Below, piece by piece: positions 28,137 to 58,220 of a stretch of DNA of 64,000 bases. The notes under the pieces were generated by a model. That model saw nothing but the letters and a program-made list of their open reading frames with translations. It was not told the origin of the DNA and searched no databases. The stretch is from Hemiscyllium ocellatum (Eukaryota), in assembly GCF_020745735.1 (NCBI RefSeq), contig NC_083409.1, positions 18,744,341 to 18,808,340 on the forward strand, read 5' to 3'. Each line of letters opens with the position of its first letter. Positions within the stretch are counted from its first letter, which is position 1. Made by a program: the position numbers and the translations under genes.

Positions 28137-28171
28137 GTACACGTTCGGTAAAGGAACCAAGCTCAGACTGA
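28137..28171 (+). CDS. IGKJ: Ig kappa-type J segment (YTFGKGTKLRL)
   Basis: FGxG motif, with a consensus GTAAGT donor at 28172-77 in phase 1. Confidence 0.96.
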
Positions 28172-32730: not shown

Positions 32731-32733
32731 CAT

Positions 32734-33333: not shown

Positions 33334-33339
33334 TGAGCA

Positions 33340-36148: not shown

Positions 36149-36328
36149 GTCAGAAGTCACACGACACCAGGTTATAGTCCAACAGGCTTATTTCAAATCA
36201 CAAGCTTTCAGAGCTCTGTTCCTTCAGCACTGAAGTCGCTTCACCTGAAGATGGAGCAGCGTTTCACAAGCTCGTGATTTTAAATAAACCTGTTGGACTG
36301 TAACCTGGTGTCATGTGACTCCTGAACA
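36149..36328. repeat. 180-bp palindromic PLE-derived element in the J-C intron
   Basis: Arms TCACACGACACCAGGTTATAGTCCAACAGG / CCTGTTGGACTGTAACCTGGTGTCATGTGA. Related copies at 5330-5460, 46880-47000, 61365-61840 and 62062-62150. Confidence 0.85.
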
Positions 36329-36948
36329 TGTCCACTCCAGTCGGACACCAGAGCCTCCACATCATATCGATAGTTTCACATCTTTGCTGAGACTCTCTCT
36401 TTGGGAGTGTCACTCTTACTCTTTTGGGAAAAGATTCTGAATGATCTCTGTGCCTGTCTCATCCTTGGAGACCTCCCACTGCCCTGTCACTGATCTCCCA
36501 TCAAGGCGATGGTTCCAGTACTCTTTTATCAAATTACCACACAGTTTGGTAAAATGGATTGTTCCAAAATCAAAACTTTTACACTTGCTCCACGGTTCTC
36601 CATTTCCATCCCTATTCTCAATCTCACTGAGTTCCGATCACTGTCACTAAAATGCTCCCACATTGATAGCCCTTCCAGCTGCCCACATTCATTCCTCAAA
36701 TGGTGGTCCAGGACTGTCCCTTATCATTCTGCTGCGTCACCATCACCTTCTCAGAGACAGTTAGGGATGGGCAGCGACTGGCTCTGCCAGTGCCGTACAC
36801 GTCCCAAAAAGCAATTTTTAAAATGCCAGTGCTTTGTCAGGTCTGCTAGGTACTGGGTACAAATGTTCAAATGTTTTACCAGTTACTGTTCAGAGAGTTT
36901 ATGTACCTTCAAAAGGCAGGGATTAAAATTGTTTCTCTTGTCTTTCAG

Positions 36949-37277
36949 TCCGTGACAACTCTCAGCCCAAGCTGACCCTGCTGCCCCCCTCCCCGGAGCA
37001 GATCAATGCCAAGGGCACTGCCATCCTGGTGTGCCTTGCCAATCACTTCTATCCCGATGAGCTGGAGGTGCAGTGGAAGAAGGACGGTGCAGTCATTTCG
37101 GACGGGGTTCAGACCAGCAACTACCTGCGAGCTTCGGACAGCACCTACAGTGTCAGCAGCCTGCTGACCCTCTCTAGGTCTGACTGGGAGTCCAACGCTC
37201 GCTTCTCCTGTGCCCTCACCCACGTGACCCTCCCCTCTCCCCTCAGCAAGGGCATCAGGAGATCAGAATGTGTGTAG
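36949..37277 (+). CDS. IGKC: Ig kappa-type C exon (RDNSQPKLTLLPPSPEQ..LVCLANHFYP..WKKDG..FSCALTH..SECV*)
   Basis: Acceptor TCTTTCAG at 36941-48, phase-matched to J. Open frame with both C1-set cysteines, the Trp, FYP and a penultimate interchain Cys, ending in TAG. Confidence 0.96.
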
Positions 37278-37805
37278 AGTGTTTGAGACAGTCCACAGAG
37301 GAGACACAACTTCAAATAGAACAGGGCTGAGCTGATAGGTCAAAGGTCATTGTCAGCACTGAATTTCAACTCTCTTCCTTCTCAGGACTGGCTTGGAGAT
37401 ACTTCTGAGCTTCAGGGGTTAAGGCTGGTCGTTGGGATAGTGTAGAGAAAACTTTACTCTTTATCTAGTCCCATGCTTTCCCTGACCTGGATGTGTTTGA
37501 TGGGGACAGTGTTAACTTGCGATGTGAAGTAAAACCTCTCCGAAGATGCTAAAGACTGTCAGCTGTGCAAAAACAATGTGAACCTCAAAAGTCTCTGTTT
37601 CAGTAAAACAGACCTCCTTTCTGCTCAGCCGCCAGTTCCAATTTAAGGTTTTGTCACTGTTTAAAGGGACAGGATTCTCATGTTATTGAGAAAATCTCCA
37701 CAAGTGTTTTCCTCAAGCTCCATTGTGGCTGTGAATTTGTGCAGCTTCCTCTGTCTGGGCTGTTAATTGCAGTCTGTTTTCTGTCAATGTCAATCTGGAA
37801 AAGGG

Positions 37806-37850
37806 AATAAAGATGAAGAAGATTCAGTCTCTGTCTCGTGTGTGCTTTGG
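37806..37850 (+). terminator. Polyadenylation signal of the C exon with GU-rich downstream element
   Basis: AATAAA 37806-11 followed by GTCTCTGTCTCGTGTGTGCTTT. Conserved in the pseudo-C copy (AATAAA 60866-71). Confidence 0.75.
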
Positions 37851-40800
37851 GAATGGCCAGAGCTGAGTCCTCAGGGATAGGTGTACGAAGTGAAAAGCTC
37901 CACCCCACCCCCAGGTATGGAGCAGGAAGGTGAGAATAGAGGGGTAATGGGGAACACAATAATCTGATGGGAATTCCCCTGAACACCAACACATCCTTTC
38001 AGCACAGCAAGATCCCGAGCCAAGCAGTTCAGTTCGCATTTTATTGATCAATTTGACCAGCAGGATCTTACTACCCAGAATAACAATACCACAGGGTTTG
38101 CAAAGTAAATATTCCATACAGCATTTGATTTGTATTTGGAGAGAATGTGCAAAATCCACATAGATATTCTCCTGAGGCAGGGATCGAACGCAGATCCCTG
38201 GCACTATGAAGCCGCAGTGCTAACCACTGAGCCACCTTGTCACCCACTATACTAACTTGATCCATCCCTGGAACAAAATATTCTGATGGCAATTCCCCCT
38301 CCACACCAACCCATCCATCAGGGACAGCAAGATCCTGAGCCAAGCAATTCAGATCAGGGTCACTGGGGACACTCTATTGATCAATATGATCAGCAGAATC
38401 TTGGAACTCAAAATAACAATTCCACAGGGTTTGGGTAATAAATATTCCATAAATTAGACCTGGGTTTTCTTTACTCTTCAAATGAGATGGAATTGCCCCG
38501 TGTGTCCCTGGAGTCAGATTGAGAATGTTCAGTCTGGGAGTCATGGCTGGGCGGGGTACAGTCAATGATAAACTGGTTCCACTTTCTGCTGTCATATTCT
38601 GTAGCCCCTGGACCATCTCAGTGACAACCATCCAGGGCTCAGGGTGGATTCCAGAGCAGCTCATTGTCCTGACTGTTGTGTTCCTCAGTCCACACGTGGC
38701 TCCAGCAATCTCACTCCATGGTTCTCGTATCAGTGGGAACCATGGGGCTGAAATCTTATCCAAACAGAATCTCACACAGCAAGGAGGCTGCTGTAGGATC
38801 AGAAACCCCTTGGATTCAGTCCCAGATTCCACTGTGGCTCTTTCATCAAACACAGCATTAGCACACTGACACCACATTCAGAGGGCAATCCTGAGATGGG
38901 GCAAGTTTGGTTCTTGATTCCAATGTGAGGAAATGGGGGCTGGGTGTGAAATGTCTAGTCTGAAACTGGTGGGGGTACTTTATAATGAAGAATAGAAACT
39001 GATTTCAGGATAAAGTCAGGTGTTGATGGGAGTGAGGAATATCTCAGTGATCTGTCTCCAGAATCCACAGCCTACACACATCCTTCTGTCAGACCCTGAA
39101 GTCTGAGAAAGCAGCTCATCGACATCCAATATTTCTCCAACCTTCCCAGAAAAGGTGAAATATTCTCTGTCTGAGTGATTCCCTGGGCAGGGCATTTTAA
39201 AAAGGGCTGTGGGAAAGGAACCATTGGCTCTCAATGACAAAGCCAATGGAAGGATGTGGAGCTGACACTGTGAAACGTAAGGGCGCAGAGGATGACACAA
39301 GAAGCAATTCAATGTTGTCACTCTCTCCTTTGGTAATAATTGGTTTTCCCTCATAATGTGCTCTCTTGTATTTGATCCACCTGTCTTTCTTGCTTTGCTT
39401 CTTTTGACTTGAGTCTGTGGATAGTTCCATCAAAACCCAATCTCCTCACACTCATCCTGGCCCCTGAAGAGATTGGTTAGAGAAGACTGAATTACAGCAA
39501 GTGACACAGATATTTCTTATCTTACCACATTGAATCAAACCATTGAGCCCATTAATCTTCAAAACAGATTCCAGCATTAAAGTCACATTTGTTGGTTATA
39601 AAAGTAACGTATTTCTCAGGCTGAAAGAAGGAAGCTTCAGACTGAGAAATGATCTAACTTAACCCTGATCCTGAGCATTGGCAAGTAGAACTAGATTGCG
39701 TTGGGATATCTGGTCAGCGTGGACAAGTTGAACCGAAGGTTCTGTCTCTGTGCTGTCTCTATGACTCTAATAGCACGACAGAACAAAGTGATATCAATTA
39801 GCACCAGAATAAATACAGGGCAGCCTATATCCTGCAGTTGGCACTCAGTGCAGCTGGCACAGAGGGGGATGCTGGGAAGTTTGGTCAATGTGGGAGTTCA
39901 GTGAACTGACTGTCACTTCAGCTGATGGGAGCCTGCACATGCACTTGGTTTGAAAATAGCAAAATAATAAACAAGGGGATAGGAGTCTGTTGACCAGATC
40001 AGCTGGGAAGAGCTTTGTGTAAGGAACCATATAAATAGTATGCTTAGGAAACCTCAAATAGGGAAATCCTAGAAATGAAAAGTAGTGAAACATTGATCCA
40101 GAGACTGAGGACAATTACTAGTTTCATGAAAGAATTGATTTCTTTCATTTGTAAGTGGGATCAGCATTTGTTCATTAAACTGAAATGATTCAGGGTAAAT
40201 ACATCTGTAGTGACTGTATAAATCTACAGCAACTCCCACTCAGGGGGTTTGGATTGGAAGCTGAGTTGTAAGAATCCTGATACATCAGGGAGGGTCAGAG
40301 CTACCTGGAGACTTTGTTCCAGATGGAAGGTGTAAGCCTCAGGACTGGGCAGTCCGATTCCATGTTAGTAAGGGGCAGGAGGGTATGACCCAAGAGGGGG
40401 TCAGATAAGGGTTTGGAGAATACAGTGGGACAGGAAAACCCCCCACTCTTTGAAACTCCAGTGAGATCAAGGCCAGCCTTTCCGATCCTTCCTCACCACA
40501 CAGCCCCCTCATACTCAGTCAGATAAAACTCCTCTGAAACACTTCCAATGGATTTATATTCTTTCTGCAATTAGGAGACCAAAAGTTCATACAAACCTTG
40601 AGATGTCCAGGAGGAACTGAACCATCACACTCTCACTTTCAGATCCCTAATCACACCTGCTCTTACTTTGCACCAGCCTTGTTACTGTCCATCTCTCATT
40701 GTCATGTACACAGTGGCGCTGAGCTGCTTTCTCGAACTGTTACAGTCTGTGTGCTGTAGGTAGACCCACAATGTGCGGAGGAAGGGAATTCCATGAGCCT

Positions 40801-42359
40801 GACCCAATAACAATGTAGGAACAGCGATATATTTCAATGAGGGGAACTTGCAAAGAGTGGTGTTCCTGTGTATCTGCTACCATGTCCTTCTTGATGGACG
40901 TGGTCATGGGTTTGGAAGGTGCTCTCTCAGGATCTTTGCTGAACCTCTGCAATGTATCTTGTAGATAGTGCTCACAGCTGTTACTGAGGGTCAGTGTGGA
41001 GGCAATGTCGATGTGGTGCCAATCAAGCGGGCTGAAATTTGATAAACAAGATTTAAATAAAATAAAATAACATAAAACAGGTTAAAATGAAATAAAATCA
41101 TCAAAAACTGTGGCTTCTTTTTGATAAAACATCACTGAATCCAAAACATTATTACCTCCTCTCTCTAATGTGGCTGCACCTGTTCCCTTTCTCCAGCATC
41201 TTGTTTTATTTGAGATTTGCTGTATTTTACTCTTGTATCTGTTTTAATACCATTGGTTATAAGAGAAGCATTGGTCAGCACAGTGGGGAGAGTTTCCGTG
41301 AGATGGTCACAAAGCCCTTATATTCACGTCGACCTGAGAGGGCAGTGGTTTAACCGATCATCCAGCAGATGGCATCTTTACCTTTGCCAGCCTCAGGATA
41401 GTTCTCCAGTGTCTGGAGTGGGGCTTGAAACCTGCAGGTTCAGGTGACGGTGTTACCACTGAGGCCGTCTATTCTTTCCTGGGATGTGGGAGTCACTGAC
41501 AAGACCAGCATTTGTTCCCCATCCCTAACTGCCCTGAAACTGAGTGGCTTGCTCGGCCTTTCAAATGGCAGGTAAGGGTCAGCCACATTGCTGGAGTCCT
41601 GGCAGAGTCAGACATCTACAACAGGTCTACAAGAACAAGGCCCTTCGGCCCAATGAGCCAAAGCCAGTCAAAACAACCATCTCACTATTCTAATTCCATG
41701 TTCCAGCAGTTGGCCCGCAGCCCTGTAAACCTTGGCATCACAGCTGCACATCAAAGTACATCAATGTTATGGGAGAGCTTCTGCCTCAACTACCCTTACA
41801 GAAAGCAAGTTACAAATTACCACCACCTTCTGCATGAAAGCGTGTTTCCTCACATTCCCTCTTAATCTTCTGCCATTTCCATTAAATCTATGCCCGCGGT
41901 CATTGATCATGAAATAACTCCACATCATCAAGTCACCCTTTATTTACACATCAACCATCCTCGACTGTAATGTCTCATATAGAGTTAGGCACCAGAGGCA
42001 CAGGGTCCCTAACACCCAACCTGTTTGATGTCAGTAAGTCATCTCCCTGTTATATCCTTGTAAAGATTCGAGCTTTTCTTGTGAAACTCCTTTGGGATTT
42101 TTTCATGGCACAGAGTCTTCCACACACTCCCATCTCTCTTGATGCTCACCCTTGTCTGGTTAATTCTTCCCATTTCCTTCTCTTCTTTCAGTTCATTCCA
42201 TTTCAGAAAGTCTGTGATATTTCCACGGATGATGTGTACTTGAAACCGCCATAGAGAAGCTCCTGTGAAGAAGCACTTCAATAGAAGGAAGGCTGATATT
42301 TGCAGGAAGCCTGGACTGTGTCCTTGTGAACCTTTTCCAAACATTTCCATGTGATCTGT

Positions 42360-43880
42360 CAGCTTCCTTCAACTCTTCCCATTTCCTCCAAATCCAGTGG
42401 GTGGCCATGGGTCCCAGCTATGTCTGCTTGTTGTCGGCTACAACAAACAACACCTCACCAGTACATGCACAGGCACCGTTCCCCAAATCTTCCGCCATTA
42501 CATCAGTGACTGCATCAGTGCTGCATCCTGCAGCCAGGCTGAACTGGAGCTGTTCATCAACTTTGCTAAGAACTTCCAACCTGCCCTTAAATTCACGTAG
42601 TCTATCTTGGACAAATCCCTCTCCTTTCTTGACCGCCCCATTTCCATCTCCGGTGACAGTCTAGGAACAGACATTTACTGTAAATCCACAGACTCACACA
42701 ACTACCTGGTCAACACCTCCTCCCAACCAGTATCCTGCAAGAACACCACCCCGTTTTCCCAATTCTTCCATCTCCGTAATATCTGCTCGAACGAGGAGAT
42801 GCTCCCCTCCCAAGTGTCCCAGATGTCCACTTATTTTGAACAATGTACTTTTCCCACCTCTGCCATCCAGAAAGCCCTCCACCACACCTCCTCCATTCTC
42901 TGCTCCCCAAATCTAAACACTCCCCTCCAAAATGCAATAGAGACAGGGTCCCCCTTGTCTTCACCTTACGTCCAATCAATCTCCGCATCCAACGTATCAT
43001 CCTCAAACAATTCTGACAACTCCAGCTCGACCCCACTATCAAGAACATCTTCCCTTCCCCACCCCTCTCTGCCTTCCACAAGGACTGTTCCCTTTGCCAA
43101 TCCTTGGTTTTCACCACACTTCACACCTACCCTCTCCTCCCCCAACAAAACCCTGGTACCTTCCCCTGCAACTGTAAAAGATGCAAAACCTGCCCACACA
43201 CCAAACCCTGTCATTTCCATCCAGGGCCCCAGTCCTTCCAGGTCAGACAGAGGTTCACCTGCCTCTCCTCCAACCTAGTTTATTGTATCCGGTGCACCCG
43301 TTGTGGTCTTCTCTGCATCGGTGAGACCAAACGTAAACTAAGGACATGTTTTGATGAGCATCTCAGCCAGGCTCACAAAGGCTGACCTGGCCTCCCAGTC
43401 ACTGCCTATTTCAATTCCCCTTCCTATTCCCTCTCTGACATGACTATCCTCTGCCTCCTCCATTACCATAAGCAATCAGACTGCAAATTGGAGGAACAAA
43501 TAATTATCTTTTGCCCGGGGTTGCTTACAACCCAGAGGAATCAACATTGAGTTCTCCAGTTTCAAAAAGCCTGCCTTTCCCAACTTTCGACTCCCTTTCC
43601 AGTCCCCCTCCTCCATTCTATTCCACTTACGGACCCTCCCTTCCAGCCACCAAATGGATTCATTCCTCCCATCGACTAAGCACTTCCAACCCTCTACCTG
43701 TGTTCATCCATCAATACCTTCCACTCCACCATTCCCCTCCACCCACGCAAACAACCGATCCCACCTTGATTTGCAGCTCCCCTTACCCCCACCTGCAGTT
43801 CTGAAGAAGGGTTATACCCGAAATGTTGACTGCTCCACCTCCAGATTCTGCCTGACTTGCTGTGTTCTTCCAGCCTCCTG
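42360..43880 (+). mobile_element. Penelope-like element (PLE) 3' part: RT C-terminus, GIY-YIG endonuclease and 3' repeat
   Basis: RT-like IFRHYISDCI..ELELFINF, and GIY-YIG region TFPCNCKRCKTC..NLVYCIRCTRCGLLCIGETKR. Frameshifted. Other 3' ends lie at 49280-49570 (-) and 53500-53740 (+). Confidence 0.88.
43795..43833 (+). ncRNA. Minimal type-I hammerhead ribozyme motif, near-intact
   Basis: GCAGTT-CTGAAGA-A-GGGT(TAT)ACCC-GAAA-TGTT-GACTGC. It has a 6-bp helix I, and the helix III CpG has decayed. Confidence 0.7.
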
Positions 43881-44721
43881 TAAGCCTCCATCCCAGCCTG
43901 GTAACGATCTCGGACACTGGAAGGAAATGCCCAGGGCGCAGGTTAACGTGGTGCAAAAAGCCTTTCAGCTGAAGCTTCAGTGTTTGCCTTCAGTGTGGAT
44001 TTTCAGTTACTGATTTACTCCCCTGTTATGTGACAGGAAGAGAGAACACTTGTTGGTGCAGTGTTTATTTTTAATCATCCCAGGATATTTAAAGCTGCCT
44101 GCACAGTGCAATCACCTTCACAAGACAAAATGCTGAGGTCCCAAAATCAGCAAACGAATGATGAGACAAATCCTTTTGGTGGCATTAGTTGAATATTGAG
44201 CAGGATACCTGAGGGAATCTCTTCAGAATGGGATCTTGTTGAGCCCCCTGAGGTGGAGGGATTGGGGTCTGGATGGTGCTGGTGGGGCTTTAAATGAACA
44301 TCCCATACATAACATTGTGTCAGAGTTCACTGCAGTCTCAGCCTGGATTCTGTGCTCTCATTTCTGAGGTGGCTTTCAATGCAATGACCATTTGACTCTG
44401 AAGCAGGAGCATTGCCCATGGAGTCACCGTCAGTAACAATGTAAACTGTGTAGCTCTGAAAGGATATCATCTCATTCATCAAATCTGTTTCTGCCCCTCT
44501 GCAGGCTGACCAGGCTGCCAGTGCCTTTCCAATACTCCCAGGTTTTCCCATGTGCCACAGCTCATTCTCCTGAAGGATAGTTTACTCAGAGTCAAAAAGT
44601 GTGGTGCTGGAAAAGCACAGCAGGTCAGGCAGTCGTGCTCAGGCCGAGGACATGACCTTGTCCCTCTGTCAGATTCTCTTCAAGAAACTCATGGCAGTTA
44701 GGGAAGGGCAACAGCAAGGAG

Positions 44722-45031
44722 AGAGATTAGATTAGATTACTTACAGTGTGGAAACAGGCCCTTCGGCCCAACAAGTCCACACCGACCCGCCGAAGCGCAA
44801 CCCACCCATACCCCTACATTTACCCCTTACCTAACACTACGGGCAATTTAGCACTGCCAATTCACCTGACCCGCACAGCTTTGGACTGTGGGAGGAAACC
44901 GGAGCACCCGGAGGAAACCCACGCAGACACGGGGAGAACGTGCAAACTCCACACAGTCAGTCGCCTGAGGTGGGAATTGAACCCGGGTCTCAGGCGCTGT
45001 GAGACAGCAGTGCTAACCACTGTGCCACCGT
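44722..45031 (-). mobile_element. Full-length HE1-like tRNA-derived SINE
   Basis: Minus strand: A box TGGCACAGTGGTT, B box GGTTCAATTCC, and a CR1-like 3' tail ending in AATCT-type repeats. Partial copies at 49-115, 6375-6530, 38130-38236 and 61535-61805. Confidence 0.9.
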
Positions 45032-47067
45032 GGTGGGGACGCATCGCTGCAAGTGCTGTACTCTGCAGTTTGGTGACCCACTTTGATAGCTGTTTGTTCA
45101 ATCTTTGAGTGCAATTCATTTTTTTGCTGATCCCAGCGTCAATCCAAAGGACTCTCCACCTTTCAGTCTGACAAACCAGGTTCACCCATGTCATGGCTCT
45201 GTTTCTGACCGAGAGTCCAGTCTTTCAAAGAGATGAATTCAAGCCTCACCAGTTTGATCATTTTAATTTTACATCATTTCTCCTGATTTCTCCCGGGATG
45301 GGGCGGGCGTTGACGTGTTGGTTATTGGTTGCCTTCCCCTAATTGTCCTGGAGAGGGCGGTGGTGAGCCATGTAATATCTGGAAAGGAAGGCGCTGGAAT
45401 TTGTACAAAAAAAGACATGAAATTCAATGTGATGTTCACAAATGTTCTTTTGGCGAGGGTGCCTGGTCTGTGACTCCTGCCCCACTGTGACATGATCCAT
45501 TTTTAATGACCCCATGATCTGGCTCAGCAAAGAACTTCGTCCAAGCAACTGGGGGTGGGCAATATTTATGAAGCTTGCCAATGATGAAGCAGAAATAATA
45601 ATGAGAAGGAATAATGCAGCTCCTTGCTCTCTGCCTTTTAGCCTCTGAGCCAGCACACTCTCACCGTTCTGGGTTTCTAATCCTCTAACATTAATTCATT
45701 AAAGTGTGGGAATATAGGAAGAGGTTTTATTTTGAACTATAAGGTCTCTTTTCTCCGTGACTCTCTCCTTTTCAACCCCCTACAATCCTGTCACCAGATG
45801 CTTGTGCTGACAGCCTTGTTGTGCAGAGTGAAAGCTCTCGGTGTTCTCTGAGGCCTCACTGCCTTGTGTCTGTCTCCACTGCAACATAAGGCAAATGACG
45901 TGTTTCTGAAACCCTGTTGAAATTAAAAGCCAGCAAAGAAAATGACTGCAACTAGAATTGAGTTGGTCTTGTTCAAAAAAATAATTTTCATTTTAAAATT
46001 ACATTTTTGTCAGTGAGTGACAAAGGAAAGATGGGGGTCCAGGATTGCTGCAGCCTCTGTCAGAACATAGGGCCCAGGAGCAGGAGCAGGCCTTTTGGGA
46101 GCTGCTGTGCCAATGAAGAAGATCACTACTCATCTGGTTATGGTCTCGCCCGTACTTTCTGCTTCCCCACCCCCTCCCATTATCCTTAATTGCCTTGTTC
46201 ATCAAAAAGTCTGTCGACTGTAACCTTGTGCCAACTCCATGAGTGAACCTCCATCCCCATGTAGAGAAGAGAATTCCACAGACTATCAATCCTCAGCAAG
46301 AAAACCCCTCCTTCCCTTTAAACTGGAGACTGGTTTGTGTTAAACCGGCCCTCCAGTCCTCGTCTGCCCGATAACAGGATCCACCCTCTCAGTATCCAGC
46401 CTGTGATATCACCTTCAGATCAGAAACTGGTAATGAGAAAGAACAGGTTACATCAGTGAGACTTTTCCCCAGAGGTGATGAACAGTGTTGATGTAAATTG
46501 TTTTTTCCAGTCCCAGAGTCCAGAACAAGAGGGTTGTTAAAATTGTAATTCAGACGATTTCAGGAAAATTTCTTTCTGACAGAGTGATGGAAATCTGGAA
46601 CCCTCAATCCAAAATAAAAAGCTGTTGAGGTTGGGTTTCAATATCCATTTACTCAGGGCAGTACGGTTTACAGGACAAAGGGAGAATGTATTCCAGGTCA
46701 GCCATGGCCTGATTAACTGGGGAACTAGGTCAAAGCAACTGATTGGTCATTCCCACTGGAATCCACTGGAATGACTACTGGTGTGTTTGCAGCTAATGGA
46801 AGGAGTCATTACCCATAGTCTTCAGCAGCTGTGCAAGTCCTCCATAGTAACTAGAAAGCAGCTGTTTCACTGTGCCTGAACAATACAAAGTCAGAGGACA
46901 CACTACACCAGGTTCTAGCCCAACTGATTCATTTGAAATCACAAGCTTCTGAAGCGCTGCTCCTTTATCAGGTGTACCCCAGTCCACCATCGACATTTCC
47001 ACATTACTGAACAGTCCAAATAAACTGGGGCTCTGTGAGGATCGAACCAGCTGGATCTGTACAAACG

Positions 47068-47101
47068 AGGAGAGAGAGAGAGAGAGAGAGAGGGAGAGAC
47101 A

Positions 47102-47150
<49 letters not shown>
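47068..47150. repeat. (GA)n microsatellite
   Basis: Read directly. Further CT/CA tracts at about 520-575, 1080-1110 and 9455-9483. Confidence 0.95.
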
Positions 47151-47153
<3 letters not shown>

Positions 47154-47559
47154 ATCTTTTGAACCAGGATACCTAATTGCACCACAATAAAAATGCTCTG
47201 CATGCTGTGATATATCAAAAATAAGCACTTTGGTGTAACTTTTGATTGTCCTCACAGTGTGCTATTTTATTCATGATGTGATACACGGAGACTATGTCAA
47301 CGTTGGGTGGCAAAAAGTATATTTTCTCCACTAATCCCTTTCCAAAAAGCGCTCTCCATCTTGCTTTAATCCTTATTGACTCTTCTACAATTGCCTCTAT
47401 TTCCTCACTCCTTTCCGGTCCCAAAGGAACATATGGACAGACGTCATGACCCCACTCTGTCTTAAATTTCATGTGTAGTGTATTGGAGCTTGGGCCCCTC
47501 CCTCAGGCCCAGGTGTAGGGGCCTGTTCAACAATCTGCACATTGTCCTATGTCTCTTTC

Positions 47560-48600
47560 TGAATGAACTGGATCAAGTTGCAGTAACGATCTGGCAACAA
47601 GGTGTCTTGTCTAAAATGTTCCCAGCATTGGATACAGAACTGGCTGTGTCAGAGGAGACAGAGGGTAGTGATGGAAGGATGGATTTCAGAATGGAGGGCT
47701 GTGTCTTGTGGGGTTTCACAGGGATCAATGATGGTACCTTTGCTGTCCATGGTCTCCATAAGTGATTTGGACGAAAACATGGCTAGTCTAATTCATGAGT
47801 TTGTGGATGCCACAAAGATTGCTGGAGTTGCAGTTAATGATCAGATTATCAGAGGATACAGCAGGACATAGATCAATTGGACGCATGGATAGAAAATGGC
47901 AGATGAAGTTTAATCCAAATAAATGTGAAATGATGCATTTTGAAAGATGAAGCACGTGGCAGAATACCTGCACAGTGAATGGCAGAATCCATTGGAGTAT
48001 TGAAATGCAGAGGGATCTGGGTGTACATGTTCACAGATCACTGATGGTGGCAGCACCTAAGGTAGTAAAAAAGGCAATGGCAGGCTTGGCTACATTGGGA
48101 GGAGCACTGAGTATTAGGATAGACAAGTTATACTGCAACTTTACTGAACTTTAGTTTGGCCATACTTGGAATATTGCATATGGTTCTGGTCACCATGACC
48201 AGAAGGATGTGGATGCTTTGGAGAGGGTACTGAAAAAATGTACCAAGAATGCTGTCTGATATGAGGGATTTTCCCAGGGTAGAGGGGTCAGTTACTAGGG
48301 GACACAGGTACAAGGTGTGGGAGGGGGTGGGTGGGTGCAGTGGGGAATTAAAACAGATGTGTGAGGTAAGTATTTCACACAAACGGTGGTGAGGGCTGGA
48401 ACACGCTGCCAGTGGAAGTGGTGGAAGCAGACACAATAGCAGCATTCAAGAAATACCTGGATGAATACACGGAAAAGAAGGGAATAGAGGGATATGAATC
48501 CTGTAGGTGAATACAGTTTCGGTGAGGAAGGGCAAAATGTGTCAACACAGGCTGGGAGGGCCGAAGGGCCTGTTCCTGTGCTGTATAGTTCCTTGTTCTT
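47560..48600 (+). mobile_element. CR1 RT/3' fragment shared with the inverted arm (50780-51880 on -)
   Basis: Both copies share the flanks beyond each end of the element, so this is one ancestral insertion that was duplicated. Confidence 0.8.
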
Positions 48601-49569
48601 TGGTCCCTGCTGTTGAATTGGATTCAAACCAACAATGCAGGAAGACACATGATGAAGTGGGTGTTTGTTTGATTTCTCACTTGTGTTAATACAGTTTTAA
48701 ATGTGTCTGCGTACTTTCCCCTCTCTCTCTGTGGAGGGTGTCACTGTCATTGTCTCCATCCGACCTTTCCACTCTCATAGTGATAGCATTTTTTGCATTC
48801 CTTCTGTTCGGGGGAGCTGTCATTCCCCCGCCCATATTACAACAATGACTAGACTTTGGAATTTCTCCATTAGCTGTAAAACATCTTTGAACATCCTGAG
48901 CTCATGAACAGTGTAACAGAAGGGCAATTCTCTCTCCTTTTTGTTTCCTCTCCATGCCTTCCCATCTGTCTCCCCACAACATCCCTCCCTTGTTTAAAAT
49001 CTGGAATGAATTATGAATCTCTGGGAGAATTTAATCTGTGGCAACATTGAAACTAACAATAACCACCTCCTTGGTGGGCTTTGAGTGTGAAGGTCAATAA
49101 CACTCTCACTGGGACTTGATCTGGGTTGTCTCCAGTCAGTCAGTGTTATTGTTTTGGGGCCAGACATTACTGACCCACCTTAGACCCTGTGCTCCGATTG
49201 AGATGACGGATGACCTGCACTGGGCTTTAACACACTGTTACCACAGCACAGAATGAAATCATGTAGCGCTGGTTAGGCAGAATCCCTGGAGCAGGAGAGT
49301 CGACATTTTGAGCATAAGCTCTTCATCAGGAATGGAGAGGAGGGAGTGAGGAGTCGGAGAGATAAATGGGAGGGAATTGGGGCTGGCGAAAATGTAATGA
49401 AGATTGCAATAGGTACGTGGAGGTGGGGGGGTGACAGTGATAGGTCAGAGTGAAGGATGGAGTGGATAGGTGGGAAGGAAGATGGACAGGTAGGACAGTT
49501 CAAAAGGGTGGTGCCGAGTTGGAGGGTTGGACCTGGGATAAGCTGGGGGAGTGGAGATGAGGAAACAAG

Positions 49570-50205
49570 TAACATCAACATTCAGAGTATTGAGTACAGG
49601 AGTTGGGAGGTCATGTTGCGGCTGTACAGGACATTGGTTAGGCTACTGCTGGAATATTGCATCCAATTCTGGTCTCCTTCCTATTGGAAAGATGTTGTGA
49701 AACTTGAAAGGGTTCAGAAAAGATTTACAAGGACGTTGCCAGGGTTGGAAGATCGGAGCTACAGGGAGAGGCTGAACAGGCTGGTGCTGTTTCCCTGGAG
49801 CATCAGAGGCAGAGTGATAACCTGATAGAGTTTTACAAAATTACGAAGGGCATGATTAGGATAAATAGACAACATCTTTTCCCAGTGGTTGGGGAGTCCA
49901 GAACTAGAGGGCATAGGTTTAGGGTGAGAGGAGAAAGATACAAAAGAGACCTAAGGGGCAACCTTTTCATGCAGAGGGTGGTATGTGTATGGAATGAGCT
50001 GCCAGAAGATGTGGTGGAGGCTGGTGCAATTGCAACATTTAAGAGGCATTTGAATGGGTATATGAATAGGAAGGGTTTGGAGGGAGATGGGCCGGGTGCT
50101 GGCAGGTGGGACTAGATTGGATTGGGATATCTGGTCGGCATGGATGGGTTGGACTGAGGGTCTATTTCCATGCTGTACATCTCTATGACTCTATGACTCT
50201 ATAAC
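49570..50205 (+). mobile_element. CR1 3' fragment with (CTATGACT)n tail
   Basis: LYRTLVRLLLEYCIQFWSP..RGH motifs. Confidence 0.85.
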
Positions 50206-50754
50206 ATTCATTCCTTGTCATTGGAGGGTCTCAAGGTGGAAGATGTGGTGTTCTTCCTCCAGTTGTTAGATGGCTTCAATTTGGCGGTGGAGTAGGCCTA
50301 GGGACTTGCATATCCTTAGCAGGTGGATGGGGAGTTGAAATGGTCGGCCACAGGATGGTGGGGTTGTTTAGTGTGTGTGTCCTGAAGATATCATCTTCCA
50401 ATCCTCCAATGAAGATGCACTGTCCTCACCAAAACATGTTGGCAAATCTCTTCGTAACACATAAAGGGAGAGAAACATTGAAAACTGTATTATCATGAGT
50501 GAGAGTCCACTTGAAACAAGGACTATGATGTTAAATGCTCCCAGCCGTAAAGAACACTGATGTATTGATGTCATTATCTTATTAAACAATATTAAAACCT
50601 CAGCCAAACATTTTCCTGCAGACAGTGTATTTAAAATATCAAGAGGCTTTCCCCATTGTTGGTTTGATCAGTGACGTAACAAGGAAGCAGCAGCTGCCCC
50701 ATGAACTCCAACAAAAGAATGAGAACAGGCTCTTCATATGGAGCTGGCTCCCGA

Positions 50755-53700
50755 GAATCCAATTCAACAGCAGGGATCAAAGAACAAGGGACAATACAGC
50801 ACAGGAACAGGCCCTTCGGCCCTCCAAGCCTGTGCTGATACATTTTGCCCTTCTATACTGAAACTATCTTCATCGACAGGATTCATATCCCTCTATTCCC
50901 TTCCTATTCATGCATTAGTGCAGGAATTTCTTGAATACTTCTATTGTGTCTGCTTTCACCCCCTCCTCTGGCTGTGTGTTCCAGGTAGTCAACTTCCTCT
51001 GTGTGAAATACTTGGTTTGTACACCTCTTTACAATGAATTCCCCCAAACCCCTGCACCTTGAACATGCGTCCCCTAGTATTTGACCCCCTCCACCCTGGG
51101 AAAAAGTCTCATTATTTCCACTCTGCCTATCCCATTCACAACTCTGTAAACTTCTATAAGGACGCACCTCATTTTCCTGCATTTCAGTGAAAACAAACTC
51201 AGTCTCTCCAACCTTTCTTCAGATCTACAATCCCCCCATACCAGACAATATCCTGGTAAACATTTTCTGCACCGTCTTCAAAACATCCACATCCTTCTTT
51301 TTGGACTGTGTGCAGTTCGATGCGACCAGAACTGTGTGCACTATTCCAAGTGTGGCCGAACTAAAGTTCTATAAAGCTGCAGCATAACTTGTCTATCCTT
51401 ACACTCAATGCCCCTTCCAATGAAGGCAACCAGGCCATCAGCCTTTTTTACTGCCTTACCTCCCTGTGCTGGCACCTTCAGTGATCTGTGGACATACACA
51501 CCCAGATCCCTCTGCATATCAATACTCCAAAGGATTCTGTCATTCACTGTATAATTCCCACCTGTACATCACCTTCCAAAATGCATCACCTCACATTTGT
51601 CTGGATTAAACTACACCTGCCATTTTTCTGTCCAAGCATCTCTATCCTGCCATATCCTAGATAATCCTTCTCATTCTCTGCACTTCTACCAATCTTTGTA
51701 TCAATTGTAAACTTACTAATTAGACCAGCTACGCTTTCCTCCAAATCATTTATGTAGACCATATACAGCAGAGTTCCCTGTGGAACACCACGAGTCACAG
51801 CCCTCCATTCTGAAAACCATCCCCCCATCACTGCCCTCTGTCTCCTCCTACTCAGCCAGTTCTGTGCCCAATGCTGGAAACATTTTAGACAAGACACCTT
51901 GTCGCCAGCTCATTGCTGCAACTTGATCCAGTTCATTCAGAAAGAGGAAAAGGACAATGTGCAGATTGTTGAACAGGCCCCAACACCTGGTCCTGAGGCA
52001 GGAGCCCAATCTCCAACACACTGGCCTCACTTCACACCAACCTTCACACAGTGCGGGGTCATGAACTCCGGCCATCAATCCCTCTGAGACCGGGATGGAG
52101 TAGGGGAACAGGGACAATTGTAGAAGAGTCAATAAGGAGTAAAGAAAGATGGAGAGAGTGTGTTGGAAAGTGTTCAATGGAGGGAACATACCTTGCGATA
52201 CCCAATACTGACAGAGTCTCCATGTATCACAGAATGTACAAAACAGCACTCCAGTAATGTGGCTGACCCTTACCTGCCATTTAAAAGGCTAAAGAAGCCA
52301 CTCAGTTTCAGGACAGGTAGGGATGGGGAACAAATGCTGGTCTTGCCAGTGACTCCCACATCCCAGAAAAGAATAGATGGGTTCAGTGATAACACCGTCA
52401 CCTGAACCTGCAGGTTTCAAGCCCCACTCCAGACACTGGAGCACTGTCCTGAGGCTGGCAAAGGCAAAGATGCCATCTGCTGGATGATCGGTTAAACCAC
52501 TGCCCTCTCTGGTCGATGTGAATATAAGGGCTTTGTGACCATCTCAGGGAAAATCTCCCCAGTGTGCTGACCAATGCTTCTCTTATAACCAATGGCATTA
52601 AAACAGATACATAAACAAAATACTGCAAATCTCAAATAGAAGCACGATGCTGGAGAAAGGGAACAGGTGCAGCCTCTGTGGGAGAGGAGGTTTAACTTTT
52701 TGGGTTCAGTGATGTTTTATCAAAAAGGCAGCAAAATTATATTTTATTTAATTTTATGCTGTTTTATATTATTTTATTTAAATTTTGTTGAAAACAAGTT
52801 TACCCACTTGATTGGAACCACATTCACACACATGCATTCCCCCCACACTGACGCTCAGTAACAGCTCTGTGTACTATTTACAAGATGCACTGCAGAGATT
52901 CACCAAAGATCCTGAGACAACAGCTTCCAAACCCATGACCACTTATATTTGGACAAGGACAGCAGGTACACGGGACCATCACCCCAGCAAGTTCCTCTCC
53001 AAGTCATTCACCAGTTTGACTTGGAAATATGAAGCAGTTCCTACATCATCACTGGGTCACAATCCTGGAATTCCCCTCCTATGACATTGTGGGTCTACCA
53101 ACAGCAGACTGACTGCAGGGGTTCAAGATGGGAGCTAATCACCACCAGGTCCAGGGCAATTAGAGATGGACAGTAAAAAGCCTGGTACAAGAGAGTGTAA
53201 ACGTGCTTAAGGACCAGAAAGTGAGACTGCGATGTTTCAGTTATTCCTGGACATTAGTGTGACCACATCTCAAATACTGAGGGTAGTTTTGGTCTCCTTA
53301 TTGAAGGAAGAATATAAATGCATCGGAGGTGGTTCGCAGGAATTTTACCCGATTGATCCCTGGAATGAGTGGGCTGTGATGAGGAAAGATTGGAAAAGGA
53401 GATAAAGGGAATGGGGCGGAGCAGGGTGTTGAGGTAGGGATAGGTTGAGAATGGTAGAGAATATGACCTGATTAGTCGATGGGAGAGTAATTTGTATTCA
53501 TCCCTCCCATCAACCAATCCTCTACCTACCTTCACCTATCCCCATCTCACCACCCTGCCCCCCACTACTCCCTTTATCTGCAGCTCCCCCATCATTCCCC
53601 CACCTCCCAACCCACCCCCATTCCTGAAGAAGGATTACAGCCAAAACATTGATTTCTCCACCTCCTGATGCTGCCTGGCTTGCTGTGTTCTCCCAGCCTC

Positions 53701-56622
53701 CTGCTTGTCAACCTTGGATTCCAGCATTTGCACTTTCTTTTGTCTCTAATCTCTTCAGGGGCCTGGATGAGAGTGAGGGAATTGGGTTTTGATGGAGCTA
53801 CCCACAGACTCAAGTCAAAAGAAGCAAAGCAAGAAAGGCAAGTGGATCGAATACAAGAGACCAAATTGTGAGCAAAAACCAATTATTACCAGTTTAGCAA
53901 TTGCAAAGCAGAGAGTGACAACATTGAATTGCTTCTGGTGTCATCCTCTGTGCACTAACATTTCACATTGCCAGCTCCACATCCTTCCATTGGCTTTGTC
54001 ATTGAGAGGCAACAGTTCCCTTCCCACAGCATAGAACATAGAACATAGAAAAATACAGCGCAGTACAGGCCCTTCGGCCCTCAATGTTGCGCCGACCGAA
54101 TCCTACCTAACCTACACTAGCCCAATAACTTCCAAATGCCTATCCAATGCCCGCTTAAATGACCATAAAGAGGGAGAGTTCACCACTGCTACTGGCAGGG
54201 CATTCCATGAACTCACAACCCGCTGTGTAAAGAATCTACCCCTAACATCTGTCCTATACCTTCCACCCCTTAATTTAAAGCTGTGTCCCCTTGTAACAGC
54301 TGACTCCATTAGCGGTAAAAGGTTTTCAGTGTCTACCCTATCTAAACCCCTAATCATCTTGTACACCTCTATCAAATCTCCCCTAAACCTTCTTTTCTCC
54401 AATGAGAACAGCCCCAAGTGCCTCAGTCTTTCCTCATACGATTTTCCTACCATACCAGGCAACATCCTGGTAAACCTCCTCTGCACTCGTTCCAATGCCT
54501 CCACATCCTTCCTATAGTATGGCGACCAAAACTGCACACAATACTCCAGATGCGGCCGCACCAGAGTCTTATACAACTGCAACATGACCTCAGGACTCCG
54601 GAACTCAATTCCTCTGCCAATAAAGCCCAGTACACCATATGCCTTCCTCACAGCACTATTTACCTGGGTGGCAACTTTCAGAGATCTGTGTACATGGACA
54701 CCAAGATCCCTCTGCTCATCCACACTACCAAGTAGCCTACCATTAGCCCAGTAATCCATCTTCTTGTTACTCCTACCAAAGTGAATGACTTCACACTTAG
54801 CTACATTGAATTCCATTTGCCACATTTCTGCCCAGCTTTGCAACTTGTCTATATCCCGCTGTAACCTGCCACATCCTTCCTCACTATCCACAACTCCACC
54901 GACTTTTGTGTCATCCGCAAACTTACTCACCCAGCTTTCAAGCCCCTCCTCTAGATCATTTATAAAGATAACAAAAAGCAATGGTCCCAAAACAGATCCT
55001 TGAGGTACACCGCTAGTAACTGCACTCCAAGATGAACATATACCATCAACTACTACCCTCTGTCTCCTTCCAGCCAGCCAATTTCTAATCCAAACCTCTA
55101 ATGCACCCTCAATGCCATACCTCCGTAGTTTTTGCATTAGCCTACCATGGGGTACCTTATCGAACGCCTTACTAAAATCCACATACACAACATCTACTGC
55201 TTTACCCTCGTCCACCTCCTTAGTCACCTTCTCAAAGAACTCAATAAGGTTTGTGAGGCACGACCTGCCCTTCACAAAACCATGCTGACTATCCTTGATC
55301 ACGTTATTCCTATCCAGATGTTCATAAATCTTATCCCTTATAATTCTCTCTAAGACTTTGCCCACCACAGAAGTCAGACTCACTGGCCTATAGTTACTCG
55401 GGCTATCCCTACTCCCCTTCTTGAACAAGGGGACCACATTCGCCATCCTCCAGTCTTCTGGTACTATTCCCGTTGACAATGACAACATAAAAATCCAGGC
55501 CAATGGCTCTGCTATCTCCTCCCTAGCTTCCCAGAGGATCCTAGGATAAATGCCATCAGGCCCAGGAGACTTATCTATTTTCATCCTTTCCAGTATTCCC
55601 AAAACCTCTTCCCTACATACTTCAATGCCATCCATTCTAAAATGCACTTTTTAATATGTCCTGTCCCAGGGAATCACTGACAAAGAAAATATTTCACCAT
55701 TTCTGGGAAAGTTGGAGAAATGTTAGATGTCAAGGAGCTGTTTCTCAGCCTTCAGGGTCTGACAGAAGGATGTGTGTAGGCTGTGGATTCTGGAGACAGA
55801 TCACTGAGATATTCCTCACTCCCATCAACACCTGACTTTATCCTGAAATCAGTTTCTATCCTTCATTATAAAGTACCCCCACCAGTTTCAGACTAGACAT
55901 TTCACACCCAGCCCCCATTTCCTCACATTGGAATCAAGAACCAAACTTGCCCCATCTCAGGATTGCCCTCTGAATGTGGTGTCAGTGTGCTAATGCTGTG
56001 TTTGATGAAAGAGCCACAGTGGAATCTGGGACTGAATCCAAGGGGTTTCTGATCCACCAGCAGCCTCCCTGCTGTGTGAGATTCTGTTTGGATAAGATTT
56101 CAGCCCCATGGTTCCCACTGATACGAGAACCATGGAGTGAGATTGCTGGAGCCACATCTGGACTGAGGAACACAACAGTCAGGACAATGAGATGCTCTGG
56201 AATCCATCCTGAGCCCTGGATGGTTGTCACTGAGATGGCCCAGGGGCTACAGAATATGACAGCAGAAAGTGGAACCAGTTTATCATTGACTGTACTCCCC
56301 AGCCATGACTCCCAGACTCCCCCAGACTGAACATTCTCAATCTGACCCCAGGGACACACGGGACAATTCCACCTCATTTGAAGAGTAAAGAAAACCCAAG
56401 TCTAATTTATGGAATATTTATTTCCCAAATTGTTCTTATGCAATTGTTATTCTGAGTAACAAGGTCCTGCTGGTCATATTCATCAATACAGGGTTCCCAG
56501 TGGCTCTGGCTCCCAAACAGTTGATTTGAATTTCTTGGCTTTTGATCTTGCTGTGCCTAAGGGATGGGTGAGCGTTGATGGGGAATTTGCATCAGATTAT
56601 TGTGTTCCCCATTGTCCCCTCC
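50755..56622 (-). repeat. Inverted paralog of the C 3' flank (matches 37938-39475, 40680-41597 and 47261-48626)
   Basis: Colinear reverse-complement blocks. Interrupted by a CR1 insertion at 54030-55640 and a non-homologous patch at about 53180-53748. Confidence 0.9.
54030..55640 (-). mobile_element. Young 5'-truncated HER1/CR1 LINE with an uninterrupted RT frame
   Basis: ORF 54112-55647 (511 aa) has DFSKAFDKVPH, GVPQGSVLGP and KFADDTK with no stops. (CATAGAA)3 tail at 54030-54050. Absent from the paralogous arm near 39200. Confidence 0.95.
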
Positions 56623-57544
56623 TGATCATGATCCTGATTACAGCCTGGAGACCTGGACATAACTTTCATCAGATTCTTTATTTCTTGCAGTTCCTCAACT
56701 CTACCCACCCAGATTCTACTTCTGACTCTATATCACTTCTTGCTATTGATTTAATTTCATTTCTTACTAACAAGGCAACTCTTGCCCCTCTGCCCATCTG
56801 CCTGTCCTTTTGATAGGACATATGTCCTTGGATATTTAGTTCCCAGCCCAGATCCCCTTACAGCCATATCTCTGTGATACCCACAACATCATACCTGCCA
56901 GATTCAATCTGCACTACAAGTTCATTCCTTCATTGACTGCACTCCTTCCCAACATTGTCCTCTTATCTCTTGTGTTTGATGTTCAACTCTTGATCCTTTC
57001 CGTACTCTCTGTCCTATTATATCTTCCAGAAACCTGAATAACTTCTCCTGAGCCCTCCTCCACTTTAACTAGTTTAAATCCCTTGGAAACTCAATTTACC
57101 TCAATTTGTGGCATCACTTTGTCTCCCGTACTCGGAATGGTTCATGCATTTAGATAAAACCTCTTTAAGTTTGTTCTATTATTGATTTTCCCTGCACATG
57201 GTTCCTTTGATATTCAAAAATTCTGCCCCTTCCTTTTATTTTCTGGTAACAATCAATCCCATCACTATTCACCAACCTACCTGCTCCTTTCCACTCTATT
57301 TCCTCATTTTCCATCCAACTCAACCGAATTATTGGGTCTTTGAGTTGAGTTCAGGACAATATTTATCTTTGAACCAGCATCATTAACAGTGGTCTTTGAT
57401 CTCATTGCTTTTCATGGGATCTTGCTGAGTAGAAACTGGCTGCCACTTTCCCGACATTGTAACAGTGACTGGTTTTCAAACAAAACTGTCTATAAATGTC
57501 TTTGGGAGAGTCTGAGGTGTTAAGGGTTCAAGTGAACTTCAGTT

Positions 57545-58220
57545 AGAGTCAGAGATTTGTACAGCACGGAAACCAACCCTTCAATCCAACTCATCAATGC
57601 TGACCAGATATCTTAAATTAATCTAGTCCCCTTTGCCAGCATTTAGCCCGTATCCCTCTGAACTCTTCCTATTCATATACCCATCCAGATGCCTTTTTAA
57701 TGCTGTAATTCTACCAGCCTCCACCACTTCTTCTGGCAGCTTATTTCATACATGTACCACCCTCCACATGAAAAGGTTGGCCCTTAGGTCCCTTTTAAAT
57801 CTTTCCACTGTCACCTTCAACCTATGCCTTCTAGTTTTCAACAGCCCCACTCTGGAGAAAAGATCTTCTCTATTCACCCTATCTATGCCCCTCATGATTT
57901 TATGAACCATTATATTGTCACCCCTCAGCCTCCAAAGTTGCAGGGACAATAGCCTCAGCCTATTCAGCCTCTCCAGATAGCTCAAACCCTCCGACCCTGG
58001 CAACATCTTTGTAAATCTTTTCTGAAGCATTTTAAGATTCACAACATTATTCCTGTAGCAGGGAGACCAGAATTGCACACAGTATTCCAAAAGTGCCCTA
58101 ACCAATGTCCTGTACAGCCGCAACAGCTCCCAACTCCAATACTCAATGCACTGCCCAATAAAGGAAAGCATACCGAACAACATCTTCACCACACTATCGA
58201 CCTGCAACTCCACTTTGAAG
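57545..58220 (-). mobile_element. CR1 3' fragment absent from the paralogous intron
   Basis: LLEYCVQFWSP..LRGD motifs on the minus strand. Confidence 0.82.

What the first reader, a model, noticed from the sequence alone, without database searches (positions are those of the whole stretch)
37938..56622. Tail-to-tail 3' arms form a decayed ~19-kb palindrome centred near 49.7 kb
Seen: 50755-56622 matches, in reverse, 48626-47261, then 41597-40680, then 39475-37938, around a spacer of only 2.1 kb (48627-50754). With the head-to-head arms upstream, this gives alternating orientation (<- -> <-). Inference: the cluster array grew by inverted (fold-back) duplication rather than tandem unequal crossover. 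This geometry permits arm-to-arm gene conversion and would make any rearrangement between clusters inversional.
Basis: partly seen in the sequence, partly recalled or inferred. Interest (0 to 1): 0.7.

Follow-up and report, generated by a model that had tools for sequence, protein, structure and literature searches.

The report
Old inverted duplication behind shark kappa gene
The DNA behind a shark antibody light-chain (kappa) gene is followed by an old, decayed mirror-image copy of itself. The copy carries only a dead, turned-round constant exon, so this is ordinary wear in a very large gene family, not a second working gene facing the first.

Summary
37,939-48,625 and 56,621-50,755 match in reverse order and orientation in five colinear blocks (86% identity over about 3.9 kb, BLAST E = 0), around a 2.1-kb spacer.

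The arms are not dispersed repeats. About half of each ancestral arm is low-copy in public reads; the rest is old LINE DNA that both arms share. Private transposon insertions account for the unequal arm lengths.

The reading is only partly right. The window has one V, one J and two C exons, and both C exons are on the + strand. The right arm is followed by a 4.3-kb block that is a direct repeat of the C1 block. This block holds a C pseudogene with a lost splice acceptor, a stop codon and a frameshift.

The layout is A> B> spacer <B' A>. Both edges of the break map to within about 20-85 bp of one point in the intact cluster. This fits an old inverted duplication of the 3' half of a cluster, with the C block flipped back.

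The arms predate the split from two related species. One junction is confirmed in an independent study.

Notes from this scan, not checked here, report the same layout at three other sites in the array. It may therefore be an inherited composite unit. Local fold-back growth and arm-to-arm gene conversion are not shown.

The parts
27128..28174 (+). V-J part of the intact kappa cluster: leader 27128-27176, V exon 27362-27660, RSS12 27661-27688, RSS23 28098-28136, J 28137-28174.
   Evidence: This is the only V, J and RSS pair in the window.
34182..37854 (+). Block A1: the distal J-C intron, the intact C exon (36960-37274) and its 3' end. It is the parent-type copy of block A2.
   Evidence: Pfam C1-set domain, E = 8e-23. 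Direct match to 56626-60910 in four blocks, 74-92% identity.
37939..48625 (+). Left arm B: the 3' flank of C1. It includes a 330-bp local tandem duplication (37951-38451), conserved islands at 38541-39090 and 41160-41600, and a shared old CR1-like LINE at 47259 to about 48600.
41602..47258 (.). 5.66-kb transposon mosaic, private to the left arm. It starts with the 3' end of a minus-strand LINE and holds a SINE at 44727-45012.
   Evidence: The flanks are contiguous in the right arm at 52244-52249.
48626..50754 (.). Spacer of the palindrome. It contains a later LINE 3' fragment at 49583-50193 (+).
   Evidence: No inverted self-similarity was found. The LINE fragment matches six or more other copies in the window.
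50755..56621 (-). Right arm B': an inverted copy of the 3' flank. It includes the shared LINE (50755-52249) and the counterparts of both conserved islands (55760-56310 and 52244-52690).
   Evidence: Contigs of two related species are 96-97% like this arm where the left arm is only 70-86% like it (records 24 and 32).
54031..55643 (-). Young 5'-truncated CR1-like LINE, private to the right arm, with an open 512-aa reverse-transcriptase frame (54115-55650).
   Evidence: Pfam RVT_1, E = 1.5e-36. Clean insertion site. Read depth about 1000 times that of the arm core.
56626..60925 (+). Block A2: a copy of A1 in direct orientation, that is, turned round relative to B'. It holds the C pseudogene at 59878-60191, a private LINE fragment at 57516-58234 and a 131-bp insertion at 60535-60667.
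   Evidence: The junction with B' is confirmed by an independent contig and by read words.
59864..60191 (+). C pseudogene with three lesions: splice acceptor AG changed to AA, TGG changed to TGA, and a 1-bp deletion near the 3' end.

Best explanation
This is a relic of an ancient inverted segmental duplication of the 3' half of a kappa minilocus.

What was copied: about 8 kb of ancestral sequence. It ran from the middle of the J-C intron (34182), through the C exon and about 4.5 kb of 3' flank, to some 20 bp past an old CR1-like LINE (48625).

Where it went: the copy lies in reverse orientation, 2.1 kb beyond the original. About 1.5 kb of that gap remains once the later LINE fragment is subtracted. 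This is the arrangement left by a fold-back or template-switch repair of a break or collapsed fork, with the spacer as the loop (inferred).

The flip: the 4.3-kb C-bearing part of the copy was then turned round, either in the same event or in a later two-break inversion. This gives A> B> spacer <B' A>.

Consequences: the copy has no V or J in the window. Its C exon is cut off from any V-J partner on its own strand and has decayed. Transposons then inflated both arms independently. Only a few islands stay alike: the C exon, its 3' end, 38541-39090, and 41160-41600 with a CTCF-like motif. These are conserved or homogenised modules of kappa cluster tails.

The structure does nothing as a palindrome. 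It is a fossil of how this gene array was reshuffled.
For: Shown:
- The inverted match is colinear through unique DNA, through a shared LINE with the same 5' boundary in both arms, and through conserved islands.
- Homology ends at the same point on both arms, next to a short spacer.
- Divergence in the unconstrained parts is similar in the B and A blocks (K2P about 0.2-0.3), so they have one age.
- The outer end of A2 maps to 37854-37917 in the intact cluster, and the end of B' maps to 37938. The two edges therefore meet within about 20-85 bp of one point, as an inversion of a contiguous copy predicts.
- The A2 left end (equivalent to 34182) is joined to the B' end at 56608-56626. This join is bridged by an exact contig from an independent study, and its words occur in two studies.
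- The C pseudogene carries three disabling lesions.
- Private, clean transposon insertions lie in each arm.
- The arms are older than the split from the related species. The species differ by about 3%, from word shares of 0.25 against 0.65 and from 5-8 differences per 140-230 bp contig. The arms differ by about 20%.

From the literature: in human inverted duplications formed by fold-back, spacers are 766 bp to 70 kb long, with a median of 3.4 kb (PMC3907307).
Against: - Nothing to the right of A2 (60926-64000) matches, in reverse, the intron to the left of 34182. A simple later inversion inside a complete minus-strand cluster is therefore not confirmed. That stretch is mostly transposons and only 3 kb of it is visible.
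- No microhomology is recognisable at the spacer edges, though after about 20% divergence none is expected.
- The two C exons differ by only 5%, with about four synonymous changes, while their flanks differ by 20-30%. Later homogenisation must be assumed.
- If the scan's unverified notes are right that the same layout recurs elsewhere, the event did not happen at this site but in an ancestral unit.
Confidence: 0.62

Rival explanations
1. Inherited composite unit. The palindrome and the flipped C block arose once, long ago, in an ancestral cluster pair. This locus received them ready-made when a larger unit was duplicated: a head-to-head pair plus the tail-to-tail relic. The array would then have grown mainly by copying large units, and this site says nothing about repeated fold-back events. 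This differs from the best explanation only in where and when the event happened.
For: - Scan notes report a 'relic of a tail-to-tail sister kappa cluster whose C block appears flipped' 283 kb upstream.
- A further note reports a J-C intron copy joined to an inverted C 3' flank 4.7 Mb upstream.
- A third reports an 18-kb decayed palindrome behind C-kappa 1.66 Mb downstream.
- The same two-step rearrangement is unlikely to recur independently.
- The arms are old, with K2P about 0.2, roughly six times the divergence between the species sampled.
Against: - The notes are unchecked AI readings, and I could not fetch those loci or compare their breakpoints.
- In reads, the unique arm parts and the junction bin show only about one to four copies at 90% identity or more. 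Any sister units must therefore be more than 10% diverged.
Confidence: 0.3
2. One complex replicative event instead of two steps. Serial template switches (MMBIR/FoSTeS, as in DUP-TRP/INV-DUP) would copy B backwards, then jump to 34182 and copy A forwards.
For: - The flipped block ends where the duplicated segment ends.
- No inverted intron sequence is seen beyond A2. A single event with three junctions explains this without a second inversion.
Against: - DUP-TRP/INV-DUP predicts that A2 runs on into a third, direct copy of B. Instead, A2 stops at the point where B' stops.
- The only B-like piece to the right (61535-61806, 88% like 44727-45012) belongs to a SINE family with four copies in the window.
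Confidence: 0.15
3. Retro-duplication by the LINE. A read-through transcript running from the J-C intron to the LINE 3' end was reverse-transcribed at a nearby nick. Twin priming then inverted its 5' part.
For: - Read on the minus strand, the copy is rc[34182..~37900] followed by [37938..LINE 3' end]. This is the architecture of a 5'-inverted LINE insertion, with a small loss at the inversion point.
- The copy is 5'-truncated and lacks V and J.
Against: - Arm homology continues about 16-25 bp past the LINE's (TTCTTTG)n tail.
- No target-site duplication is seen between 50735-50754 and 60926-60945.
- The RNA would have to be about 8 kb or longer and unspliced.
- A retrocopy landing 2 kb from its source would be a very large coincidence.
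- Transposon ends are so dense here that a breakpoint within 25 bp of one is not remarkable.
Confidence: 0.04
4. Chance neighbours or an artefact. Either the two arms are tails of unrelated clusters brought together by other rearrangements, or the inverted arrangement is an assembly error.
For: - Kappa tails are a multi-copy family, so any two neighbouring tails will match.
- The spacer junctions were not confirmed by reads.
Against: - Homology runs through unconstrained DNA and ends at the same point on both arms, 2.1 kb apart.
- Arms that are 77-93% alike cannot be collapsed or mis-joined by a long-read assembler.
- One junction is confirmed independently.
Confidence: 0.06

Closest known systems
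Fold-back inverted duplications with a single-copy spacer (human constitutional rearrangements; Hermetz et al. 2014, PMC3907307)
   Same: Two inverted copies sit around a short unduplicated spacer. The spacer here is 2.1 kb, and the human range is 0.77-70 kb with a median of 3.4 kb. Repeats lie near the junction.
   Different: - Here the copy is short (about 8 kb) and interstitial, not a chromosome-end event with a terminal deletion.
- It is tens of millions of years old, so microhomology cannot be read.
- Part of the copy is turned back.
Oppositely oriented IgL clusters of teleosts, with inversional V-J joining between clusters (Zimmerman et al. 2008, PMC3014032)
   Same: Light-chain miniloci are arranged as multiple clusters, with neighbours in opposite polarity.
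   Different: - In zebrafish the oppositely oriented parts are usable V, J and C segments, and inter-cluster inversional joins were found in cDNA.
- Here the inverted partner has no V, J or RSS in view, and its C exon is dead.
- That paper records the older view that shark IgL segments all share one polarity within a cluster. This still holds here for the intact cluster.
Inverted proximal and distal copies of the human IGK locus (own knowledge, not checked here)
   Same: A kappa locus was enlarged by a large inverted duplication.
   Different: The human duplication copies hundreds of kb of V genes that stay functional. This one copies the C end of a single minilocus and left a pseudogene.
L1 insertions with 5' inversion by twin priming (own knowledge; papers listed were not read)
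   Same: The order and orientation of the two parts of the copy are the same, with a small loss at the inversion point and the 3' end near a LINE tail.
   Different: There is no target-site duplication, homology runs past the LINE tail, and the position beside the source is implausible.

Membership tests
Shark kappa V-J-C minilocus (cluster), claimed for a third, minus-strand cluster | V exon with RSS12 and J with RSS23 on the same strand as C | tested here: not met
   Only one V, one J and one RSS pair were found, all on the + strand at 27.1-28.2 kb. None lies in 48.6-64 kb. Sequence beyond 64 kb was not visible.
Shark kappa V-J-C minilocus (cluster), claimed for a third, minus-strand cluster | Intact C1-set constant exon with a splice acceptor, in the orientation of its 3' flank | tested here: not met
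   The second C exon (59878-60191) is on the + strand, opposite to its former flank B'. Its acceptor is AG changed to AA, and it has a TGA stop and a 1-bp deletion.
Inverted segmental duplication (palindrome with spacer) | Colinear reverse-complement homology through unique as well as repeated DNA | tested here: met
   Five colinear blocks, 82-93% identity, E = 0. The unique parts are low-copy in reads.
Inverted segmental duplication (palindrome with spacer) | Both arms end at the same homologous point next to a short spacer | tested here: met
   The arms end at 48625 and 50755, both about 20 bp past the tail of the shared LINE.
Fold-back mechanism specifically | Inverted microhomology between the distal spacer end and the end of the duplicated segment | tested here: inconclusive
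   None was recognisable, but about 20% divergence would have erased 2-8 bp.
In-place inversion of the C block within a contiguous minus-strand copy | The two edges of the break map to one point of the uninverted copy | tested here: met
   The outer end of A2 maps to 37854-37917 and the end of B' maps to 37938.
In-place inversion of the C block within a contiguous minus-strand copy | Sequence beyond the flipped block continues the intron in reverse orientation | tested here: not met
   60926-64000 has no inverted match to 28.2-34.2 kb. Only 3 kb is visible, and it is mostly transposons, so this is weak evidence.
LINE retrocopy with twin priming | Target-site duplication, and a copy that ends at the LINE tail | tested here: not met
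   No TSD was found. Homology runs 16-25 bp past the tail.
   This is true only for the LINE and SINE parts. Bins 52100-52699, 53100-53499 and 55700-56699 are about as deep as one or two copies.

The most novel reading that the evidence does not exclude
The relic may be kept as a unit, not merely tolerated. In this reading, each working kappa cluster of this sub-array is followed by a mirror-image copy of its own tail, and the two conserved 3' modules face each other. These modules are the 550-bp island and the island with a CTCF-like motif, which is on the + strand at 41362 and on the - strand at 52470. The pair could act as a boundary or loop anchor that isolates the cluster. The recurrence of the same layout at other sites would then reflect selection as well as descent.
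Probability: 0.1. Interest if true: 0.6.

Novelty: new member of a known kind. Interest (0 to 1): 0.3.

Why it matters
How the hundreds of shark antibody miniloci are laid out relative to one another was long unknown. It bears on whether clusters can recombine with each other.

This site shows that inverted duplication and inversion have reshaped the kappa array. It also shows that a mirror-image flank does not prove a working, oppositely oriented neighbour: here it marks a truncated, dead copy.

The practical value is for annotation, since an orphan C exon should not be counted as a gene. It also helps in choosing conserved 3' modules for enhancer or insulator tests. It does not open a new mechanism.

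Tried and rejected
- Rfam (gathering threshold) and tRNA scans of the whole window found nothing. They therefore give no support for the hammerhead-bearing element noted nearby, and no tRNA-SINE call.
- Pfam found no domain in the open frames of the 98% island (38486-38866 +, 38377-38877 -), nor in the frames of the 5.66-kb insertion.
- Lookups of earlier findings by sequence and by relatives were blank.
- Read laying returned only 120-230 bp contigs. It could not span the spacer junctions or show whether the relatives share the B'/A2 junction. The 76-bp junction query found only organism A, which is uninformative for relatives at about 3% divergence and five sampled words.
- A search for inverted intron sequence to the right of A2 found nothing.
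- A RAG-mediated origin of the flip was rejected, because no heptamer lies at 34182 or at 37855-37938.
- A fold-back primed by inverted LINE copies (a hybrid repeat at the junction) was rejected, because arm homology covers the whole LINE and runs past it.
Full report
**What is in the window.** It holds one complete kappa-type light-chain minilocus on the + strand:
- leader 27128-27176;
- V exon 27362-27660, followed by a perfect RSS12;
- a perfect RSS23 and J at 28098-28174;
- a C exon at 36960-37274, 8.8 kb further on, with a Pfam C1-set domain at E = 8e-23.

The long J-C intron is mostly LINE and SINE copies. A second C exon lies at 59878-60191, also on the + strand. It has lost its splice acceptor (AG to AA), carries TGG to TGA, and has a 1-bp deletion. 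No other V, J or RSS pair exists in the window on either strand.

**The observation.** The five colinear blocks, their coordinates and their identities are listed under the observation check. Together they give 86% identity over about 3.9 kb of aligned columns.

The spacer is 48626-50754. The unequal arm lengths come from clean private insertions:
- Left arm: a 5.66-kb transposon mosaic at 41602-47258, which begins with the 3' end of a minus-strand LINE.
- Right arm: a young CR1-like LINE at 54031-55643 with an open 512-aa reverse-transcriptase frame.

Without these insertions each arm was about 4.3-5 kb.

**Are the arms just repeats?** Only in part. The inner 1.4 kb of each arm is an old CR1-like LINE. 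The two copies are 77-82% alike, while other copies in the window are 59-65% alike. They also share the same 5' boundary next to the neighbouring block, so the LINE was present before the duplication.

In contigs of four public runs, the LINE and SINE parts are 100 to 10,000 times deeper than bins 52100-52699, 53100-53499 and 55700-56699. Those bins are about as deep as one or two copies of an exactly matching contig.

The 4.3 kb to the right of the right arm (56626-60925) is a direct repeat of 34182-37854, the block that holds C1. The layout is therefore A> B> spacer <B' A>, not a plain tail-to-tail pair of clusters.

The end of B' corresponds to position 37938 of the intact cluster. The outer end of A2 corresponds to 37854-37917. 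Both edges thus fall within about 20-85 bp of one point. The left end of A2 (equivalent to 34182) is joined to the end of B'. This is what results if a contiguous minus-strand copy of [34182..48625] had its C-bearing part turned round. The same reader noted this separately (s1-233896), and my alignments agree.

The join at 56608-56626 is real. An exact 153-bp contig from a second study bridges it (record 16), and all five sampled words across it are held by runs of two studies.

**Age.** Unconstrained parts of both the A and the B blocks differ by K2P about 0.2-0.3. Two related species hold 24-25% of the sampled words, against 65% for the source species. Their contigs differ from the right arm by 3-3.6%, in places where the left arm differs from it by 14-30%. 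The two arms were therefore already separate sequences long before these species split.

**Islands of identity.** Identity rises to 95-99% in the C exon and to 92% just 3' of it. It reaches 97-100% in 38541-39090 and 91-95% in 41160-41600.

The C exons differ by only 5%, with about four synonymous changes. Purifying selection alone does not explain this, so some homogenisation must have occurred.

For the 550-bp island, contigs from all three species show further paralogues that differ from both arms at six positions. The island is thus a conserved module of a small family of cluster tails. Arm-to-arm conversion is possible but not demonstrated.

The second island carries a CTCF-like motif at 41362-41375 (+) and 52470-52483 (-). 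The motif count in the window is no more than chance. Its position does match a conserved element described by an earlier follow-up in this scan (s1-191592).

**Mechanism.** I considered four routes.
- **Fold-back or template-switch inverted duplication.** A 1.5-2.1 kb loop fits the geometry. It matches the spacer sizes measured in human cases: median 3.4 kb, range 0.77-70 kb (PMC3907307).
- **The flip of the C block.** It may be a later two-break inversion or part of the same complex event. The 3 kb visible to the right of A2 shows no inverted intron sequence. This mildly favours a truncated copy made in one event, but the stretch is mostly transposons.
- **A DUP-TRP/INV-DUP structure.** This is unlikely, because A2 stops where B' stops instead of running into a third copy of B.
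- **A LINE-mediated retrocopy with twin priming.** It reproduces the order and orientation of the parts exactly. It fails on three counts: there is no target-site duplication, homology runs 16-25 bp past the LINE tail, and the copy sits 2 kb from its source.

I found no cryptic RSS at the breakpoints, so a RAG-made inversion is not supported.

**Context.** Papers held here state that shark Ig genes are miniclusters whose number and distribution vary by species (PMC12227049). An older paper states that segments within a shark cluster share one polarity and that rearrangement stays within clusters (PMC3014032). I found no paper describing how neighbouring kappa clusters are oriented relative to one another.

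Within this scan, follow-ups call head-to-head pairs routine in an array of roughly 200 copies (s1-228448). First-reader notes report the same relic with a flipped C block 283 kb and 4.7 Mb upstream, and another decayed palindrome behind C-kappa 1.66 Mb downstream. The scan has therefore found this kind of structure before, on other DNA of this genome.

I could not test those notes. If they hold, the structure here is probably an inherited composite unit. The inference that the array grew by repeated fold-back would then be wrong in its generality.

**Verdict.** The palindrome is real, old, and an ordinary product of rearrangement in a large gene family. The 'third cluster' is a truncated, dead copy with its C block turned round. 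Fold-back origin is the best reading of the geometry. It rests on shape, not on junction sequence.

Noticed in passing
window 41279-41317 (+); counterpart about 52566-52528 (-): An RSS23-like motif, CACAGTG-23 bp-ACAAAGCCC, sits inside the 91-95% conserved island 4 kb behind the intact C exon and about 45 bp before the CTCF-like motif. In the relic arm the heptamer reads CACACTG. About 0.1 such relaxed hits are expected by chance in the window.
   Followed up: partly
window 41362-41375 (+) and 52470-52483 (-): Identical CTCF-like cores (CCAGCAGATGGCAT) face each other across the palindrome. The count in the window is not above chance (2 found, 1.2 expected), but both lie in the conserved island.
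   Followed up: partly
window 36960-37274 vs 59878-60191: The C exons differ by 5%, with only about four synonymous changes, while the flanking intron differs by 20-35%. The exon seems to have been homogenised after the duplication and before the pseudogene decayed.
   Followed up: partly
window 60535-60667: A 131-bp insertion private to block A2, flanked by a 17-bp target-site duplication (CCCAGATCTCYTTCCTG). Related pieces lie at 49268-49335, 14351-14411 and 62726-62819. The Rfam gathering scan gave no hammerhead hit anywhere in the window.
   Followed up: partly
window 54115-55650 (-): An open 512-aa reverse-transcriptase frame in a 5'-truncated CR1-like LINE with a (TTCTATG)3 tail. Read depth is very high at 99% identity or more, so the family looks recently active.
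   Followed up: partly
window 141-5309 vs 26342-21098: Head-to-head inverted arms upstream of the V gene (K2P 0.10-0.18), around a transposon-rich spacer of about 16 kb. A scan note places an inverted cluster just left of the window.
   Followed up: partly
window 8241-8518, 30399-30709, 44727-45012, 61535-61806: Four + strand copies of a SINE-like repeat of about 280 bp, 68-88% alike. ARAGORN finds no tRNA-like head.
   Followed up: no
window 28175-36959: The J-C intron of the intact cluster is 8.8 kb, far longer than the classic few-kb shark cluster. At least four LINE fragments and a SINE fill it.
   Followed up: no
window 37951-38118 vs 38270-38451: A local tandem duplication of about 330 bp (76% alike) at the start of the left arm, with a SINE fragment between the copies. 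The right arm has a single copy.
   Followed up: no
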